Below are positions 2,750 to 53,957 of a stretch of 64,000 bases of DNA, one piece after another. The notes beneath the pieces were generated by a model. The model made no database searches and was not told where the DNA came from. It saw nothing but the letters and a program-made list of their open reading frames with translations. The stretch's first letter is position 1. Every line of letters begins with the position of its first letter. The stretch spans positions 815,103 through 879,102 of the forward strand of contig RHPI01000026.1 in the NCBI GenBank assembly GCA_009103225.1, written 5' to 3'. The stretch is from Chlorokybus atmophyticus (Eukaryota; Plantae; Mesostigma and Chlorokybus algae). The translations under genes were made by a program, and so were the position numbers.

Positions 2750-3160
2750 ATTATGCATAATAATAATAATGATTATCGTCATACTTAAAGCAGACATGTT
2801 CAGCAATATACACATGCACAAATACACGTACTACCTGACGTAGATGGCTATTATACCTCTTACATTTGCTATTGCTGTTCCAATTGTACGGCTCCTATAA
2901 CACAACCACCACTGTAGCGCTCACAATGGGTGCCACCCATCGTGCACACATAGCAATGTGCATTATAATAATAACAATTATTGTCATGCTTAAAGCAAAT
3001 ATCTATACATACACATGCACAAATATACGTAATACCGATGCAATATGACTATCATATCTTTTACATTTACTACTGCTGTATCAACTCAACATCTGCCGCA
3101 TCGCGACCACTGCTGTAGTGGTCACAATGGGTGCCACCCATTGTGCGCGTATATCATTGT
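2750..3160. repeat. Diverged ~200-bp tandem duplication (approximate boundaries)
   Basis: Shared blocks TACACATGCACAAATA, TTACATTT and CACAATGGGTGCCACCCAT appear in both halves. Confidence 0.75.
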
Positions 3161-5990
3161 GAATATGGTTACACATTCTTACGCAATATGCGTTGTGGCT
3201 TGACACAATGCATTTATATAAAATTGAATGCTACGTAAATATAATTGATTGTCACACACATGCTGGTATGCGCATGTTGCTTAGTCTAGCTAGCATGTGC
3301 GTGTTGCTTGACCTGCATGCACGCAATGCATGTTGAATCTTTGTACACACACTCGCACAATCCCTCATGCAGCTTTTGTCCTCCACCGCCGCCGCAACTG
3401 CGACCTGCCGCCAAGCGTAAACTGCGACGGATGACGCGCGGCGCAGGCACCTGCTTACTGGCACACCAGGGCGCTGGTTTGCCGTCGGTAGGCTTCACCA
3501 CTGCAAGTGGTGTCGCCCAATGCACTCCATCCGAATGATAAATCTGTCTGGCTTCCAGGCCGTATCCGGCAGCGCGGTAAGGCAATGCGGACGGCTTTTA
3601 TAAATTTCAGCCGCCACGTGGCGCGCGTACGAAAATGCAGACATGCAACGCTTTCAATAATGTTAGTGATTAGTGATCCCTTTTTATCCTGCGCCAACTG
3701 TGCTTTCAACGGGGATGCTCTAAGTGTGAAAAATTTGATATGCTCTTGACTTCAACCGGAGGAGAATGCGAGCCCATTGCGCCAAACGGGGCAGCCCTAC
3801 TCATCATAGTTGTGGCACGCCTTATTTTAACATATTTCCAGCGCTTATAGCTTGTACTCTTGCCTTTATATGTTATGTTCAATATGGCTGTTGACCTAGT
3901 AATGGTGAGCGAAGAGTGCGACAGTGTAACAATGCTCGTGCTCATATGCACAGCACACCAGTCATACAACAAGTGTGGGCAAGTACTACTATGCTTAGTA
4001 AGCACAGTCTTGACACGAGAACCTTGCCTTCCTCCGCGCATGCACGCACGCATCAAGCACACACACGAACACTACTACTTCTCACGCCAAGTCAGAACGC
4101 AGCAGTGTGCCTTGGATCACAACTCTCTCAAGCATACACCAGCATACCACAGCAGAGAGCAGAAAGCAAAGTTGGTTGTAGTACACAGGGTTTTCCTATT
4201 TATATCAGCACCAAAACTAAGCAGGTAGTAACCAGGCGTTTTGTTCATGATTTACCAAATCTAAAGGACTGTATAAGTGCAGGCTGCTGCCCCTCGTCGG
4301 GTACCTTTCACGCGGCAGCTGACTGTGCACTCCGCGTCGTAAGGTACTGCACATGCACAGTGGTAGCTGACGAAGTCCGCGTCACCTGACATTGCCTAGT
4401 CAGGTGCACTGTCACATGCCGCGGCAGTCATGTCGCTACTGGCTAGGCGGCAAGCAGGTCGCAGGCAGCTGCTGCAGAAGGCAAAATCGCGCGCTGCAGT
4501 AGAGCCGGCGCCAGAAGGGCCTAATAAAGCCTTGAAAAACCCTTTGTTAAGCCAGAAAAGGGGGCAAAACACATACTATACATGCAGTAAAATAATCAAA
4601 AGGGTCTAGGCTGTTACAGACAGTATCACAGTAACGTTTAGCATCCGCGCTTGTGTTCAATGGCGTTACTGTGAGCATGGGCGTCACCGAACTGAACCTG
4701 ATCAAACCATTGACTTCGTATGCCAAGCATGTGAAAAAAATTGTGAAACATCAAGTTTATAACAACGAGGGTTATGATGGTTCGTATGATACATGTGCGT
4801 GCAACTATTTTCGACGTATTACAAAGCATGCGTTCAAGAAAGGTGTGGGGGGTATTGATGCATTGCATTGATTCATTTGTGCGCACATAATGTCAACGTA
4901 CAACTGGCACGTATAATCGTAGTAGTAACTATTTATATATGGAATGTGATGACATATAATAAGTAATTTAAAAAATGATGTGGCAAAGCTATTAAGAATA
5001 ATAGCTAATGACGTGTTAGATTGCATCTTTTGATGTTTGAGCGTTTATATACGTACGCCTCCATGCGATAAAATCTCAGCAACGCGATAGACACTATTGA
5101 AGCTGATCATGTATGTATCTGTGTAAGATGTTTGAGCTTGTGTTGAGCTTAAGCTTAATTGCATACATTACCCATCGAGCAAAAGAGGGTTCATTTTCTT
5201 TTGGTTGAAGAGAAACATGCGAAATGAAGGGTGGTCCGTGTCTCGGACCGCAAGCTACGTACTCTAAATGTACTTTCTTGCCATGCGCATCACCCGTACA
5301 ATGTAATGAAGGGTGGTCGGTGCCTCAGACCGCAAGCTACGGACTCTAGCAGTACGGTCTGTGTGTACTTTCTTGCCATGTTGCCCCAGACGCAAAGCCC
5401 GTAGCACGACACAGGGCCAAGGCTGAACCTTTTGCCGTCAGAATGCGCCGTGGAAGCCGGCCGCTAGGCATGAGCATGAGCATGAGCAGCATAGCGCAAG
5501 CTGGCCAGTGAGCTTGAACCTCTTGGAGCTGCTGGAGGTGGCGGCGGCGGCTTGGGGAGCAAGCTGGCGAGCGCCCGCGGTTCAGCAAGTTGAGCTGACT
5601 GGCATGACCAGCATGAAGGTGCGTGCGCAGTGGTGTTTGAATGGATGGCGTGCGCAGCACAAGTTAAGGGTGAAACCTTTCCACCGCTAAGTTATGCAGC
5701 GCATGGCTTGAGCTGTTTCTGGGTGAACGTGGGTGGAACAGTGCGTGCGTGCTTGCGTGCGTGCGTGCGTGTGCAAAGCCATGGCTCCTGCCAGTTTCAC
5801 CACCAGTCTGCATGCCTCTGCGCACCATGCTCACGCACAAACTCTGAGTTGGCCTAGAACTATGTGCAGAGGGCCTCCTGCAGCGCGCTGGCTGTGCTGG
5901 TGTGCTGCCTTTGCATCTGTTTGGGCTCCGCTCCCATACCTGCGTTGGGGGACGCCGCCCAGCCTTGGATATCTCTTCTGGGTTAAAACG

Positions 5991-31867: not shown

Positions 31868-33895
31868 CACACGCAACATAAGCGCATCTGTACATGTGCA
31901 TGCATACGCATGCACACATGCGTATTTGAGGCTCTCAACTAGCAAAGGAGTGCATTGTTACCGCATCATAAACTTGGTCGTTGCGAGGGAAGTCGCCGAC
32001 CCTCCGTGGCAACACGTGGATGTGTACGTGCGGCACAGTCTGCCCCGCAGCCGGCCCGTCCTGCAGGAATGCAGTGGTGCATACAATTGCACGGTTGTCG
32101 TCACATAACCTTAATTTTAACAATTGCATGCTTGACATCACATCAGTGCACGACTGAGCGCATGAGTACGGGAAGCGGTAAGCGCGCCAATATGAAGCTA
32201 AAGCTCGGATAGGACATAGTTATCACTTGCACACATGCACGCATGCGCTGTACACACACGCGCGGTGCATACACAGCACACACATCCACCGCACATGTGT
32301 GGTGAGGTGAGGAGTACGCAGGACACATGCAAGTGTACGAACACGTTCAGCACGCACATCCATGCGCATGCTATTTGTATCTGTGCAACACACTGCATAC
32401 CTGTATGTATGAGCACATCTTGTGCATATGCTGCACCTACGCACACACAGGCGCACGCACACACCCCCCCACCCCCACACCCCACTCACCCACCTGTATA
32501 GCGAACGTGAGCGACTGCGCGCCAAAGTGCCTCTCGACAGCGTGTCCGACGCGTTGTGCGGTGCGCCAGAGGTCGGAAACCTCCTCGGGCCGCAAGTCGG
32601 TGAAGCGGGGCACGCGGCGGCGAGAGAGGATGAGGACGTGTGTGAGGATGAGAGGTGTTAAGGTGGGCAAGGAGCATAGGGGGAGAGGGGGAGGGGGATG
32701 AGAGGGCGTGTGGGGAGGATATGACCTGCGAGAGAAGGGAATGAGCAATTAGCGGATGAGATTACGTGCACACGCACACGTGCTTGCACAAGCGTGCGCA
32801 TGCACACACAAGTCCCAAACAGTAACACACACCGATGCATGTGCCCACCCGTTCTCGCGTGCACGCGCACACGAGCACGCATCTGTATACTCTACCACTT
32901 ACCCACTCACTCACTCACTCCCTGCTGCATCCACTCAGTGTGTTCTGCAGGAAGAGAGTGGTCGTACCTGGGACGACCGGTTTGAGGTTGACCATCGCGA
33001 GGGCGTGCTCGGACCAGAAGAACGCCTCGAACGCAGGCACTTTGTACGGACCAAAGTCGAATGTTGTGGTTGGTGTGTCAACTGCTGTCGGGACTGACTC
33101 TGTGTCTTCAGCCCGAGGGTGGGAAGCCTGACAGGTAGTTGTTGTTGTTGGTGGTGTGCAGAGGTTGGTACAACTTGGTGTGCGCGCTTGAGCGTGAAGC
33201 AACACATCAAGGGCAGGAGATGGTGCAACAGCGTGTGTGTGCGTTGCAGCTGCACAAGTTTTTTAACGTGTGTGCACCAGTGTAAACGTGTTGTATGTGT
33301 GTGTCTCTTGGCGCATGCATGCGCGTGTGCGCATGACATTGCAATAGGCCTAAGCATACACGCGCATGCACACGCACACGCACGCATACGCATACGCACA
33401 CCTACACGTGCACACACAAAACTACCAACACACAGCAATGGCAACACCTTGTCTGATGACGCCATCGTCCTGAAGCTGATGCGCGTCCGTGAGGCGAGAC
33501 GGGTCCGAGCAACAGTCGCGCGCAGCAAACAAGCAGGAGGGAGCTGCAATCAACAACACACACTACCAACATTAGCAACAAACCAACATGGCATTGCCTC
33601 TTCACAAGCAGCACACCGCGCGTTATGGTGCTTGCTAGAGTGATACGACTATGGGTACATACATTCGCTTGAATGTATGTACCCATAGTTATGAGTAACA
33701 TGTACTACTAGTGGTACACACGTAAGGTTACATATACGCAACGCAATGCATATCAGCCTCTCTGATGTAGGGAATTGTTGCTGATGCCGTCACATACTCA
33801 GCAACAGTGCATGCATGCAGTGAAACCTGGCGGTTGAGAATGAGGTGGCGTGCCGCCAACGTCGCCGCTGTCGTCAGCACCGTTCCCGTCGACAT
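31645..33895 (-). CDS. FHIT: Fragile histidine triad protein (bis(5'-adenosyl)-triphosphatase)
   Basis: FDFGPYKV...[27 protein letters not shown]; [20 protein letters not shown] (HIT motif); [17 protein letters not shown]. Exons include 33895-33827, 33543-33448, 33127-32968, 32725-32723 and 32639 onward. Confidence 0.95.
32640..32722 (-). other. U12-type (minor spliceosome) AT-AC intron, 83 nt, in FHIT
   Basis: 5' end ATATCCTCC; branch site CCTTAAC 17 nt from the 3' end; terminal AC. Removing it restores the conserved PGHVL reading frame. Confidence 0.85.
33648..33689. repeat. Perfect 19-bp hairpin with a 4-nt loop in FHIT intron 1
   Basis: ACTATGGGTACATACATTC-GCTT-GAATGTATGTACCCATAGT. Confidence 0.9.
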
Positions 33896-34234
33896 GCGGG
33901 CAGTGCCTGCGCTCCTCCGCCGCCGCCGCTGCCTCCTGCTCCTTCTCCTTTACCTTCGCCGCCGCCGCTACCTGGTTAACCCACCTTCAATGACCTTTGC
34001 CTCAACCACGAAACAATAACCGAGTTCAACAACAGCCCGATCAGCCGACCTTGTTCGGCGGCCCGTTTCTTGAATTCGGTTTCAGGAAAACCCGCGCAAA
34101 ACGGCGAAACATTCAAATTGACTTCTTTTGCCCGCTTCAACGCAACGACGCTTTACAACATCGCCTCGCAGCAACGCCGCCCGCAACGCTGACGCGTCTT
34201 CTCGAGCCTGCAAACCGCAGCTAGCCACGTTCTG

Positions 34235-34314
34235 ATTGGCTCAAATAGCCCAAAGAGCTAACGTTAGTACTGAGGTTAAGGTAAGGTGAGATTAGGGCTT
34301 GGTGGCGTATATAA
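34235..34314 (+). promoter_or_regulatory. H2A.X core promoter: inverted CCAAT box (34235-34239) and TATA box (34308-34314)
   Basis: CTGATTGGCT and TATATAA lie about 190 and 120 nt upstream of the ATG. Confidence 0.6.
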
Positions 34315-34429
34315 TCCAAGTGAGGCGGCATAGTGAGGCATCTCATTGGTGGCTTGCTTGCTGTTGTCGGCGTCGTTGGCGGAGGACGTTTCTTTGTCGT
34401 TAAGTGTGTAGACACGCAGCCTTCTCATC

Positions 34430-35000
34430 ATGTCTGGACGCGGCAAGACCAAGGGCAAGAAGGCCGTCTCCCGCAGCGCCAAGGCGGGGCTGCAGTTTCC
34501 TGTGGGCAGGATTGCCCGCTACCTCAAGGCCGGCAAGTACGCCACCAGGGTCGGCGCAGGCGCACCCGTCTACCTCGCCGCAGTCCTCGAGTATCTCGCC
34601 GCTGAGGTATGCAGCAATCCCTCTCACGACACAACCCGCAAACACCTCCTTCCGTCACAACCAATCTCCAAGGGTTTTGCAGACTCAGATTAGGGTTTCA
34701 GCCTAGGGTTTTGCACGTACTGCTGCATGCTGGCTTGTTGATTGTAGCTCGGTGGTTGATTGTGCCTAACATTGCTTCTCTGTTCAGGTGTTGGAGCTGG
34801 CTGGCAATGCTTCCAGGGACAACAAGAAGACGAGGATTGTGCCCAGGCACATCCAGCTGGCGGTGCGCAACGACGAAGAGCTGAGCAAGCTGCTGGGCCA
34901 GGTCACAATTGCCAACGGTGGCGTCCTGCCCAACATCCATTCTATCCTACTCCCCAAGAAGACTGCCAAGAAGGGCGCATCGCAGTCACAGGAGTTCTAA
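34430..35000 (+). CDS. H2AX: Histone H2A.X (one intron, 34607-34787)
   Basis: [20 protein letters not shown]...[10 protein letters not shown]|VLELAGNA...LLPKK. C-terminal SQEF* is the plant-type H2A.X phosphorylation motif. Confidence 0.97.
34691..34711 (-). promoter_or_regulatory. Two telo-boxes (AAACCCTA) in the H2A.X intron
   Basis: TAGGGTTT at 34691-34698 and 34704-34711; other copies at 52308-52315 and 63897-63904. Confidence 0.55.
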
Positions 35001-35075
35001 GCTTTCACTCTGCTGATTCCCGTTCCCACCCAGGCATCAGTAACCCTTTGATGCTTTGAAGCCCGCCTCGCAAAT

Positions 35076-35098
35076 GGTGTTTATTTAAACACCACCCA
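35076..35098 (+). promoter_or_regulatory. Histone mRNA 3' stem-loop-like element
   Basis: CAAAT-GGTGTTT-ATTT-AAACACC-ACCCA, 75 nt after the H2A.X stop. Confidence 0.75.
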
Positions 35099-35700
35099 TG
35101 TGTGAGGAATTGCTGTCGCTCATGCGTCCTCAAACAGTTCATCACTCCTAAACTGAGAAGAGCTTCATGTGCATGCATACAGGCACACAATGCACATGGA
35201 ATTGGGGTAGAATAGTTACTGAGTGTTTAGTGGGAGCGCTAGCGCAGTTGTTTTGTAGATTTGTGTATATTAAGAGCAAAGCTGTGCATGGTGGCATGCG
35301 AGTTATAGGATGTGTTGTTAAATTGACGCGCTTGCAGGGAGGCTGCCTGTGCGTGTTGAAACTGTCAGTGGTGCTGTGGTCAGTCGTACGAACTGGTGAG
35401 TAAGGCAAGGGCTCCTTGCCAAGGAAGTTCTTTTCCATTCCTCATCTGCTGCCACTACTTGAGGGCTTTGTGACTTTCCCCAACAGGTAACAAGCGCCCA
35501 CAAGGTGCGATGCGTGCTCCGTCAGGTATCCCAACTAGGCTATAAATCAAGCTGAGCTCAGGTTGCACCAAACATCTTCGAGCTGATCTATTCTGCGTAC
35601 GCATGCATGAATACGCTCACCTCCGCCTTGCTTTCCTTGCATGCACTGAGCTACAGATTATACGTTGAGCGCTGTTTCTGCCTTGTTGCCGTTGATTGGG

Positions 35701-35701
<1 letters not shown>

Positions 35702-35742
<41 letters not shown>
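35702..35742. repeat. (TG)n microsatellite
   Basis: Directly visible. Confidence 0.95.
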
Positions 35743-35744
<2 letters not shown>

Positions 35745-36969
35745 ATGTTACGTTGCACCATTCAGCATTGCTTAGGTGAGTGGTTATGTGAGTGCAAGTT
35801 AGGTTGACTTGATGCAAACTTGCTGTTACTGATGCATGAACCATGAGGTATATGTTTGCTGACGGTTCGAGCCGCTGGCTGAGCCCTGTTGGTTTTGTTG
35901 CACAGTCGACTTAGCATGCGTGTTCGTGCACTATCTCCGCGCGCATGTGTGTGTGCATTTGCGGTTCACACGCACACGCACACCCATGTGAATGTGAATG
36001 TTTTGATATTTAGAACAAACGTTATCAGCCTATTCAAGTACACTCCAAAGATTAAATGATGCTAGCAAGCACACAATACCATAAGTGCCCAAGGCCATTC
36101 AACAACCAAAGCGGCCGCGGCGCTCGTATAGCGTTGTGACGTGTGTATGTACAGAAAATGCAAGTGATCATGATACATGCAACATGCATGACACATGCCT
36201 TGTTCACCAAGCTCATCAACATGCAATGATTATTATTTACCACCGGGGTCTACCTATACTTGCCACACGTAACTATTGTAACTACTGCCTTCAACCCCCA
36301 TCAGACATACATGCATGCATTTGTTCATTATTTGTACACAAGGCGTAAAAACACGTTAGCTAGCGGCACAGCTTCAGGCAACCTGTCCAGAGGGAGTTCT
36401 GTATGTTGTAACCATGGCTGAGGGCTCCTCAGCCCCGCCCCTCTGTGCGTTTAGGGTTGTGTAGCGATGTGTGATGTGTGCGGGTAGGCATTGTGCAGCA
36501 CTGACCGCCAACACTTGCATGTCAATATTAATAGAGGTGTGACTTGATGAGTGCATGATGGAATGGTGTTGTCATACGCGGCTGCATCTTATTATTACAT
36601 AACGTGTTGTACATACAATCACAATCGATACCCTATACCATGTGGTGTGCGCCATCGCACACCACATTGTGTGTACAACACTTTATGCACTATCACATCG
36701 AATGATCAATAACACACCATGCATCATGATGTATAACACCCCGTGCATGCAGCATACGAGCTTTGTACACCACATTGTATATGCAACACTATATTACATT
36801 TACATGCGTTGAGCCATCAGCGCTGCCACCATGCCTACACATGCAGTCACACTCCACACCAACCAGCAAAGGGTAATGTACCATGATGCCTAAACCACTG
36901 TGCTATGACAGCAAAAGTTGCTGCTATAGGGGGAGCCACATGTCTCATATATGCCCCATCCCATATATG

Positions 36970-52997: not shown

Positions 52998-53957
52998 ATG
53001 GTTTGCGCTATGGGCGTGGAGGTCGGCACTGTCCATTCCAGGACGGACCACAGCGACGAGTTCCTGCTTCTGTCGCCCAGCACAACGACCACATCAAAGT
53101 CTAGGGTGGAGAAGGACAAGGAGAAGGAGACGGACGCACACAGGTTGGCGCAGCGGCAGAAGCAGGTGGATTATGGGAAGAACACACTCGGCTATGAACG
53201 CTACGTACGAGAAGTACCCAAGTAAGCTGCTGGTTGTTGCTGTTGTTGATGATATTGCTGTTTTTGTCAATGGTGGTATTGCTGTTATGTCGATATTGGT
53301 GTGGACAATTGGTGTTGATGATTGTTGATGATTGTCATCATCCTTAGGTACAAGCGGAGAAAGTGTCATCCTTCCACACCAGACACGCGCCAAATGTGCA
53401 GCAAACGCAGCTGGGACGGCCAGGTATGACACATTACCCCCCCCCCNNNNNNNNNNNNNNNNNNNNNNNNNNNNNNNNNNNNNNNNNNNNNNNNNNNNNN
53501 NNNNNNNNNNNNNNNNNNNNNNNNNNNNNNNNNNNNNNNNNNNNNNNNNNNNNNNNNNNNNNNNNNNNNNNNNNNNNNNNNNNNNNNNNNNNNNNNNCAC
53601 CCACCCACACAGACAGAGGTGCATTATTGCTTGTTGTGTTCACTAACACATATCCACACTCCTCATTCCATATCCATGCATCCATCCATCCAGATCCGCA
53701 AGTGGCGGCGGCTGCTCCACGAGTTTGACCCCCCTATCGAGGCCGGCGACGAGGTGGTGGACGTGGCCGCCGAACGAACGCGCAAGAAGCGGGTGAGGGC
53801 ACCGGCACCATCCTCACTCACACATCTCATGGAGAAGCAGGACAAGGAGGCTAACATCATCAACAGCAGCAACAAAAAGGACGACGGGGATGTTTGTATG
53901 AAGGACAGCTTCAAGGGTCTCAGCATTTATGACGAGTTTGAGGGGCCGCTGTTGTGA
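52998..53957 (+). CDS. SLBP: Histone RNA stem-loop (hairpin)-binding protein
   Basis: Three exons give RLAQRQKQVDYGKNTLGYERYVREVPK-YKRRKCHPSTPDTRQMCSKRSWDGQ-IRKWRRLLHEFDPP, the SLBP RNA-binding domain (YGKNT, TP, SxRxWDxQ, WxxxLH). The start could be 52998 or 53010. Confidence 0.92.

What the first reader, a model, noticed from the sequence alone, without database searches (positions are those of the whole stretch)
34430..35110. Intron-containing H2A.X with a histone 3' stem-loop of variant geometry
75 nt after the SQEF stop lies CAAAT-GGTGTTT-ATTT-AAACACC-ACCCA, then TGTGTGAGGAA, a possible purine-rich downstream element (seen). ACCCA after the stem is the canonical cleavage context. The GGTGTT/AACACC stem resembles what I recall for green-algal histone genes, but here it reads as a 7-bp stem/4-nt loop (or 6-bp/6-nt) rather than 6/4. 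Stem-loop histone genes are normally intronless, and land-plant histone mRNAs are polyadenylated (established). An intron-bearing, stem-loop H2A.X in a probable streptophyte alga would be a transitional state, or a dual-processed mRNA like vertebrate H2AX (inference).
Basis: partly seen in the sequence, partly recalled or inferred. Interest (0 to 1): 0.7.

Follow-up and report, generated by a model that had tools for sequence, protein, structure and literature searches.

The report
Algal H2A.X gene with histone stem-loop
A streptophyte-alga gene for the DNA-damage histone H2A.X, split by one intron, carries a genuine green-lineage histone 3' stem-loop, yet some of its RNA reads through it; this fits recently published work, so it is a solid but fairly ordinary case.

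Summary
A two-exon H2A.X gene (34430-34606 and 34788-35000, ending SQEF) is followed 75 nt after the stop by GGTGTT-TATTTA-AACACC-ACCCA, then GAGGAA.

- **The hairpin is a real histone stem-loop.** A covariance model built only from 46 stem-loops behind H2A, H2A.X and H2B genes of other green organisms hits this site alone in the 64 kb (29.4 bits, E 1.6e-7). Rfam's animal-weighted model gives only 13 bits.
- **The geometry is not unusual.** Loops of 4 to 9 nt are common in this lineage.
- **A possible downstream element fits.** GAGGAA sits where relatives show a purine peak, 13-16 nt after the stem.
- **The binding protein is encoded nearby.** A complete SLBP RNA-binding domain lies 18 kb downstream.
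- **Intron plus stem-loop is not rare.** Several algal H2A and H2A.X genes have both. So does a Physcomitrium H2A gene with the same intron position.
- **RNA reads through.** Transcriptome contigs show the coding intron spliced, RNA passing the hairpin, and a second intron (35396-35486) spliced in the 3' UTR. An RNA ending at the stem-loop could not be tested.

Papers from 2026 already report SLBP and stem-loops in green algae, mosses, ferns and cycads. Earlier unchecked notes of this scan report stem-loops behind H3 and H4 genes elsewhere in this genome. Verdict: a new member of a known kind.

The parts
34308..34314 (+). TATATAA, a TATA-like box upstream of the gene
   Evidence: Read directly from the sequence. 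The X2 contig starts at 34353 and the X1 contig at 34309. Function was not tested.
34430..34606 (+). H2A.X exon 1 coding part (59 codons, ends ..YLAAE)
   Evidence: Pfam Histone match. Spliced in contigs.
34607..34787 (+). Intron 1: 181 nt, GT..AG, phase 0, at LAAE|VLELAG
   Evidence: Skipped in contigs of runs X1 and X2. Moss and land-plant H2A and H2A.X genes have an intron at the same position (L080, 58).
34788..35000 (+). H2A.X exon 2 coding part, ending ..[10 protein letters not shown] and stop TAA
   Evidence: Pfam Histone_H2A_C, E 2.9e-20. The spliced protein is 129 aa, 93.8% identical to P0003 and 91.5% to Mesostigma P0096.
35076..35093 (+). Histone 3' stem-loop: GGTGTT / TATTTA / AACACC. 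The stem can extend to 8 bp (35075-35082 with 35087-35094) around an AUUU loop.
   Evidence: Model R1: 29.4 bits, E 1.6e-7 for 35066-35107. Fold energy -8.5 kcal/mol, z -3.05. Rfam Histone3 13.1 bits.
35094..35098 (+). ACCCA, the expected cleavage context after the stem
   Evidence: In relatives the positions after the stem are A (100%), C (93%), C (89%), A (64%). Cleavage itself was not shown.
35104..35109 (+). GAGGAA, a candidate histone downstream element
   Evidence: It covers positions +11 to +16 after the stem. In 45 relatives, purines make up 82, 80, 71 and 69% at +13 to +16, against about 45% elsewhere. Pairing with U7 was not testable.
35099..35395 (+). 3' UTR part present only in read-through RNA
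   Evidence: The X1 and X2 contigs run unbroken from the coding sequence through the hairpin to 35397 and 35394.
35396..35486 (+). 3' UTR intron: 91 nt, GTGAGT..CAG
   Evidence: The joint is in the X2 contig that also holds the coding sequence. Splice sites were read.
35487..35651 (+). Downstream 3' UTR exon of the long RNA; its end is unknown
   Evidence: X1 contig 35486-35651 has mean depth 94, against 1916 for the main contig. Contigs cannot place RNA ends.
53130..53732 (+). SLBP gene: RNA-binding domain in three exon pieces (about 53130-53222, 53340-53426, 53688-53732), with a run of N in the intron between the last two
   Evidence: Pfam SLBP_RNA_bind profile positions 1-31 (E 2.6e-11), 29-58 (E 2.4e-8) and 56-70 (E 0.005). 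Motifs found.

Best explanation
The hairpin at 35076-35093 is a working histone 3' processing signal of the green-lineage type. It has an A-rich 5' flank, a GGTGTT/AACACC stem, ACCCA after the stem, and a purine-rich element about 10 nt further on.

Inferred mechanism: SLBP, encoded 18 kb away, binds the stem-loop. A U7-type machinery cuts after ACCCA, near 35098, giving a short H2A.X mRNA without poly(A), probably during DNA replication.

Shown: part of the transcription reads through the signal. That RNA keeps the stem-loop, loses a 91-nt intron in its 3' UTR, and runs on to at least 35651. It is presumably polyadenylated further downstream.

The gene would then have two 3' ends, as vertebrate H2A.X does. 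The coding intron is the old streptophyte H2A intron and has no bearing on 3' end formation.
For: - Model R1, built only from other organisms, finds this site alone (29.4 bits, E 1.6e-7).
- Among metagenome H2A loci, 44 of 68 have a perfect GG..CC hairpin followed by AC within 200 nt after the stop in sense. None has one in antisense or in the coding sequence, and shuffles give 0.3 loci.
- Stems vary with both sides changed at 4 of 6 pairs.
- The closest H2A.X relative found, L002 (93.8% identical protein), has GGTGTT-ATCTT-AACACC-ACCA 42 nt after its stop.
- GAGGAA coincides with the family's purine peak at +13 to +16.
- The SLBP RNA-binding domain is complete.
- Read-through and the spliced 3' UTR intron are seen in contigs of two runs from two studies.
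- The downstream exon has about 20 times lower mean depth than the main contig in X1. This fits most RNA ending earlier, but it is only a hint.
- Papers report poly(A)-less histone mRNAs and SLBP in green algae and moss (PMC13130582), stem-loops in Klebsormidium (bioRxiv 10.64898/2026.10.14.759114), and dual processing of human H2A.X (PMC7807067).
Against: - No RNA end at 35098 was seen. Only contigs were available, and they cannot show ends or local depth.
- Both runs hold RNA that passes through the signal, so cleavage is at best partial.
- Rfam Histone3 is far below its gathering score.
- No U7 snRNA, Lsm10 or Lsm11 was examined.
- No poly(A) tail or clear poly(A) signal was found for the long form.
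- Other histone genes of this same genome could not be fetched.
- The hairpins used to build R1 were chosen for perfect pairing, so the pairing counts are partly circular.
Confidence: 0.6

Rival explanations
1. The stem-loop is real and conserved, but in this gene it is not a cleavage site. All mature H2A.X mRNA is the long, spliced, polyadenylated form. The hairpin serves only as an internal SLBP-binding or stability and translation element.
For: - Contigs of both runs read straight through the hairpin and join it to a spliced downstream exon.
- An outer helix, 35066-35072 with 35101-35107, could hide the purine-rich element (z -4.0).
- H2A.X is a variant needed outside S phase.
- The true H2A.X gene of the liverwort Riccia has no stem-loop.
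Against: - The full processing context is kept, not just a hairpin: ACCCA and purines at +13 to +16.
- The libraries were probably poly(A)-selected, which would hide a poly(A)-less form.
- The downstream exon is about 20 times shallower than the main contig in X1.
- The outer helix is absent from relatives.
Confidence: 0.22
2. The short stem-loop-ended mRNA is the only functional product. The read-through RNA is processing failure. Its exon junction lies about 395 nt after the stop codon, which would mark it for nonsense-mediated decay, so it is waste rather than a second functional form.
For: - There is a spliced intron far downstream of the stop.
- The downstream exon has much lower depth.
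- That such junctions trigger decay in plants and animals is established knowledge, not tested here.
Against: - The long form was assembled in two independent studies.
- Human H2A.X uses its long form functionally (PMC7807067).
- Decay was not tested.
Confidence: 0.12
3. The hairpin is a chance palindrome or a decaying relic with no present function.
For: - Rfam Histone3 gives only 13.1 bits.
- The bare pattern occurs by chance in 16 of 100 shuffles of the window.
- The motif occurs once in the window.
Against: - R1 gives E 1.6e-7, with the flanks matching too.
- It lies at the right place and on the right strand behind a histone gene.
- The nearest orthologue, L002, has the same element.
- SLBP is intact.
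Confidence: 0.06

Closest known systems
Green-lineage histone mRNA 3' stem-loops (Chlamydomonas, Volvox, prasinophytes, Klebsormidium, Physcomitrium), as reported in PMC13130582 and bioRxiv 10.64898/2026.10.14.759114
   Same: - GG..CC 6-bp stem (GGTGTT/AACACC), A-rich 5' flank and ACC(C)A 3' flank.
- Purine run about 13 nt after the stem.
- Position 17-143 nt after the stop.
- SLBP present in the genome.
- Physcomitrium H2A (L083) has GGTGTT-TAAT-AACACC and the same coding intron.
   Different: - Here the loop is 6 nt, or the stem is 7-8 bp with AUUU. This is within the range seen, but not the commonest 4-5 nt.
- The gene is H2A.X, which PMC13130582 excluded from its survey.
- The organism, said by earlier notes to be Chlorokybus, is not named in either paper's main text.
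Vertebrate H2A.X (H2AFX) with dual 3' end processing (Mannironi 1989, as cited in PMC7807067; Griesbach 2021, PMC7807067)
   Same: An H2A.X gene with a stem-loop plus a purine-rich element close to the stop, and a longer read-through RNA that extends well beyond it.
   Different: - The vertebrate gene has no introns. Here there is one in the coding region and one in the long 3' UTR.
- The stem-loop-ended form and the poly(A) tail are proven in human cells, and neither was seen here.
- Common descent of the dual arrangement is not shown.
Animal histone 3' stem-loop, Rfam RF00032 (GGCUCUUUUCAGAGCC)
   Same: A 6-bp stem starting GG and ending CC, A's before it, and ACCCA after it.
   Different: Stem positions 3-6 differ, the loop is longer, and the score of 13.1 bits is far below the gathering score of 34.
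Replication-dependent histone genes that give spliced polyadenylated read-through RNAs (PMC3661734; Physcomitrium L083/L084 here)
   Same: Read-through past the stem-loop, followed by splicing in the 3' UTR.
   Different: In Physcomitrium the stem-loop lies inside the 3' UTR intron and is removed from the long RNA. Here the intron lies 300 nt after the stem-loop, which stays in the long RNA.

Membership tests
Histone mRNA 3' stem-loop (processing signal) | 6-bp stem starting GG and ending CC | tested here: met
   GGTGTT 35076-35081 pairs with AACACC 35088-35093.
Histone mRNA 3' stem-loop (processing signal) | 4-nt U-rich loop, as in the animal consensus | tested here: inconclusive
   The loop is UAUUUA with a 6-bp stem, or AUUU if a seventh U-A pair forms. 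Relatives have loops of 4-9 nt.
Histone mRNA 3' stem-loop (processing signal) | Reaches the Rfam RF00032 gathering score | tested here: not met
   13.1 bits against 34, E 2.3 in 501 nt. No match at gathering threshold in the window.
Histone mRNA 3' stem-loop (processing signal) | Matches a model of stem-loops behind histone genes of related organisms, flanks included | tested here: met
   R1, built from 46 sequences with none from this window: 29.4 bits, E 1.6e-7. The next hit elsewhere in the window scores 14.7 bits and is low-complexity.
Histone mRNA 3' stem-loop (processing signal) | Lies shortly after the stop of a histone gene, on the sense strand | tested here: met
   75 nt after the TAA. 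Relatives lie 17-143 nt after the stop.
Histone mRNA 3' stem-loop (processing signal) | Purine-rich downstream element that pairs with U7 snRNA | tested here: inconclusive
   GAGGAA at +11 to +16 coincides with the family's purine peak. No U7 sequence was available and Rfam found none in the window.
Histone mRNA 3' stem-loop (processing signal) | SLBP encoded by the genome | tested here: met
   The SLBP_RNA_bind profile is fully covered by three exon pieces at 53130-53732.
Histone mRNA 3' stem-loop (processing signal) | Mature mRNA ends a few nt after the stem, without poly(A) | not testable with these tools
Only contigs could be laid, and they cannot show RNA ends.
Histone H2A.X | H2A fold plus a C-terminal SQ[E/D] and hydrophobic residue | tested here: met
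   Pfam Histone and Histone_H2A_C. The protein ends SQEF.
Dual-processed H2A.X (vertebrate type) | Both a stem-loop-ended and a polyadenylated read-through mRNA from one gene | tested here: inconclusive
   Read-through spliced RNA is shown. Its poly(A) tail and the short form were not seen.

The most novel reading that the evidence does not exclude
H2A.X of an early-branching streptophyte alga is made from one gene as two RNAs: a stem-loop-ended form tied to replication, and a polyadenylated spliced form for the rest of the cell cycle. This would be the same solution vertebrates use. It would imply that dual 3' end processing of H2A.X is either very old or has arisen twice, and was lost on the way to liverworts and seed plants.
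Probability: 0.4. Interest if true: 0.5.

Novelty: new member of a known kind. Interest (0 to 1): 0.3.

Why it matters
It adds an H2A.X gene of a deep streptophyte branch to the growing list of plant-lineage histone genes that keep the SLBP and stem-loop system. It shows that an intron and a stem-loop coexist there without difficulty. It also offers a simple test case for whether the two-ended H2A.X mRNA known from vertebrates exists in the green lineage.

A practical lesson follows. Rfam's histone model misses this lineage's stem-loops, while a lineage-specific model finds them cleanly.

Tried and rejected
- **Rfam:** the gathering threshold gave nothing on the whole window. The permissive scan gave only a weak Histone3 match among chance hits.
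- **Bare pattern:** its count in the window is not significant on its own.
- **Other histone genes:** the window holds none.
- **Same-genome comparison:** the genome is not in the gene-position collection, and the exact 87-aa exon-1 ORF is not on record. Core histone genes of this same genome therefore could not be fetched or compared.
- **Earlier notes:** a word search for the motif found nothing. Notes on stem-loops behind H3 and H4 genes gave titles only.
- **Papers not held:** Müller and Schmitt 1988, and a PMC id I recalled for the Dávila López and Samuelsson 2008 paper. My memory that Volvox H3 genes combine an intron with a 3' palindrome stays unverified.
- **Outer helix:** the helix around the stem-loop is absent from four relatives, so I do not count it as part of the element.
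- **Poly(A) signal:** TGTAA and AATAAA are absent near the gene. Only TATAAA at 35541 and ATTAAA at 36051 were found, so the poly(A) site remains unknown.
- **Organism:** not verified. It is 'organism A' in coded runs, and Chlorokybus rests on earlier notes only.

Full report
**1. What is in the sequence**

Reading 33600-35600 and the ORF list confirm the gene.
- Exon 1 runs from the ATG at 34430 to 34606 (..YLAAE).
- The intron is 34607-34787, GT..AG, 181 nt, phase 0.
- Exon 2 is 34788-35000, ending ..[13 protein letters not shown].

The spliced product is 129 aa. Pfam finds Histone and Histone_H2A_C (E 2.9e-20). The SQEF end makes it an H2A.X.

The 3' region holds, in order:
- CAAAT as the 5' flank;
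- GGTGTTT at 35076-35082, 75 nt after the stop;
- ATTT;
- AAACACC at 35087-35093;
- ACCCA at 35094-35098;
- TGTGT;
- GAGGAA at 35104-35109.

Alone, 35071-35098 folds into an 8-bp stem with an AUUU loop (-8.5 kcal/mol, z -3.05).

**2. Is the hairpin more than chance?**

Taken alone the evidence is weak.
- The pattern GGTGTT-N6-AACACC turns up in 16 of 100 shuffles of the window.
- Rfam finds nothing at gathering score in the window.
- Rfam's Histone3 model gives 13.1 bits against a cut-off of 34.

I therefore collected relatives. A word search with exon 1 and a scan of metagenome contigs with an alignment of H2A.X proteins (A1) gave 82 loci with H2A or H2A.X genes.
- Of 68 loci with enough 3' flank, 44 have a perfect 6-bp GG..CC hairpin followed by AC within 200 nt after the stop on the sense strand.
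- None has one on the antisense strand of the same stretch.
- None has one in the last 200 nt of the coding sequence.
- Shuffles give 0.3 loci.

Aligned (A2), these elements read A-rich flank, (A/C)(T/C), GGTG(T/A)(T/A), loop, (A/T)(A/T)CACC, ACC(A). Loops of 4, 5, 6, 8 and 9 nt all occur. Four of the six pairs show changes on both sides. Because I picked only perfectly paired hairpins, that count is partly circular.

The neighbouring H2B gene in L001 carries GGTGAT-AAATTA-ATCACC-ACCAC. This is a 6-nt loop like the one here, with a compensated stem change.

**3. The independent test**

Covariance model R1 was built from those 46 sequences, none from this window. It finds 35066-35107 on the + strand at 29.4 bits, E 1.6e-7. 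The next hit elsewhere in the 64 kb scores 14.7 bits and lies in an ACC repeat. The flanks match as well as the stem.

Positions after the stem in 45 relatives show a purine peak at +13 to +16 (82, 80, 71 and 69%, against about 45% elsewhere). The window has G, G, A, A at exactly those places. Whether it pairs with a U7 RNA cannot be tested here.

**4. The machinery**

A motif scan and Pfam show an SLBP gene on the + strand at about 53130-53732. Three exon pieces cover the SLBP_RNA_bind profile from position 1 to 70. A run of N lies in the intron between the last two pieces.

**5. RNA evidence**

Two runs from two studies hold most of the stretch.
- Their contigs skip the coding intron exactly, so they are RNA.
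- The same contigs run unbroken through the hairpin, to 35397 in X1 and 35394 in X2.
- The X2 contig then skips 91 nt with GT..AG ends. From I place this intron at 35396-35486 (GTGAGT..CAG).
- X1 has a further contig at 35486-35651.

So an RNA that reads through the stem-loop and is spliced in its 3' UTR exists.

The evidence has limits.
- The mean depth of the downstream contig in X1 is 94, against 1916 for the main contig. This fits most molecules ending earlier.
- However, contigs give one depth per contig and cannot show ends, so this is only a hint.
- No poly(A) tail or convincing poly(A) signal was found.
- An RNA ending near 35098 could be neither shown nor excluded. Poly(A)-selected libraries would lose it in any case.

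**6. Are the intron and the H2A.X identity unusual next to a stem-loop?**

They are not.

Intron plus stem-loop elsewhere:
- L056, L060 and L061: SQEY end, intron after GRIAR.
- L062: SQEV end, intron after YLKKGK.
- L046: canonical H2A, intron after APVYL.

Intronless H2A.X genes with the stem-loop:
- L002, L003, L017, L018 and L053.
- L002 encodes the closest relative of the window's protein (93.8% identity, same ASQSQEF end).
- It has AAAAAACT-GGTGTT-ATCTT-AACACC-ACCA 42 nt after its stop.
- Mesostigma H2A.X is 91.5% identical.

Intron position:
- The position here (LAAE|VLELAG) is shared by many moss-type H2A genes and by a land-plant-like H2A.X, L080.
- In Physcomitrium patens, an H2A gene with that same intron has GGTGTT-TAAT-AACACC-ACC 32 nt after its stop (37.3 bits). 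NCBI names this gene H2AX, although the protein ends GSPE.
- There the stem-loop lies inside a 3' UTR intron that is removed in a long transcript contig (L084 compared with L083).
- The true H2A.X gene of the liverwort Riccia has no such element.

The picture is of an old green-lineage arrangement, kept in this alga's H2A.X and lost from H2A.X somewhere among land plants.

**7. Literature**

- PMC13130582 (2026) reports poly(A)-less histone mRNAs, RF00032-type stem-loops and SLBP in green algae, moss, fern and one cycad, and moss genes that give both RNA kinds. It left H2A.X out of its survey.
- The preprint 10.64898/2026.10.14.759114 (2026) reports stem-loops and SLBP widely in eukaryotes, including divergent ones in Klebsormidium.
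- Neither names Chlorokybus in its main text.
- PMC7807067 describes the dual stem-loop and poly(A) output of human H2A.X.

**8. Most likely mechanism**

I put 0.6 on this reading. SLBP binds the stem-loop, and cleavage after ACCCA gives a short poly(A)-less H2A.X mRNA. A fraction of transcription escapes, is spliced at 35396-35486, and is polyadenylated further on.

Shown:
- the signal's membership of the family;
- the SLBP gene;
- the read-through spliced RNA.

Inferred:
- cleavage at the signal;
- the tie to replication;
- the poly(A) tail of the long form.

Rivals:
- The hairpin acts only inside a polyadenylated mRNA (0.22).
- The long form is waste removed by nonsense-mediated decay, since its junction lies about 395 nt after the stop (0.12).
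- The hairpin is chance or a relic (0.06).

**9. Verdict**

This is a new member of a known kind. Interest is modest, because the general phenomenon was published in 2026 and the geometry is within the family's range.

The most interesting open point is whether a vertebrate-like two-ended H2A.X mRNA exists in a deep streptophyte branch.

Earlier notes of this scan (s1-079832, s1-079799, s1-183942) say that H3 and H4 genes elsewhere in this genome also carry stem-loops. I could not check them. The organism name Chlorokybus also rests on earlier notes only.

Noticed in passing
window 53130-53732 (+): An SLBP gene whose RNA-binding domain is split over three exons. A run of N (an assembly gap, about 53430-53610) lies in the intron between the second and third piece. 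The upstream part of the protein was not modelled.
   Followed up: partly
window 35066-35072 with 35101-35107: CCUCGCA can pair with UGUGAGG and enclose the stem-loop, overlapping the purine-rich element. The 50-nt fold has -18.2 kcal/mol and z -4.0. The helix is absent from four relatives, so it may be chance or a local regulator of cleavage.
   Followed up: partly
L083 3125-3258 and L084 463-540: In Physcomitrium patens the H2A stem-loop (3139-3154) lies inside a 3' UTR intron that is spliced out in a long transcript contig. Cleavage at the stem-loop and splicing therefore look mutually exclusive. A second 3' UTR intron starts at 3317.
   Followed up: partly
L001 6330-6370: The called H2A product of this 1.38-Mb ENA contig runs out of frame near its end. 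One missing base in a polished long-read assembly would explain it. In the other frame it ends ..LLPKKSKKD, with the stem-loop 57 nt later.
   Followed up: no
window 33447-33921 (-): The upstream neighbour is transcribed the other way. Contigs skip 33544-33826, which is CT..AC on the + strand and so GT..AG on the - strand. The two genes share a space of about 400 nt that holds ATTGG boxes at 34235 and 34346 and an ACGCGT at about 34192.
   Followed up: no
window 35703-35745: A (TG)n microsatellite lies just after the last transcript contig. It probably breaks the assemblies and so hides the real 3' end of the long H2A.X RNA.
   Followed up: no
L004, L005, L006, L009, L011: Several H2A paralogues of one environmental alga share the stem GGTGAA/TTCACC and a conserved CAGAGTATC 9 nt after ACCA. 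This looks like a lineage-specific downstream element.
   Followed up: no
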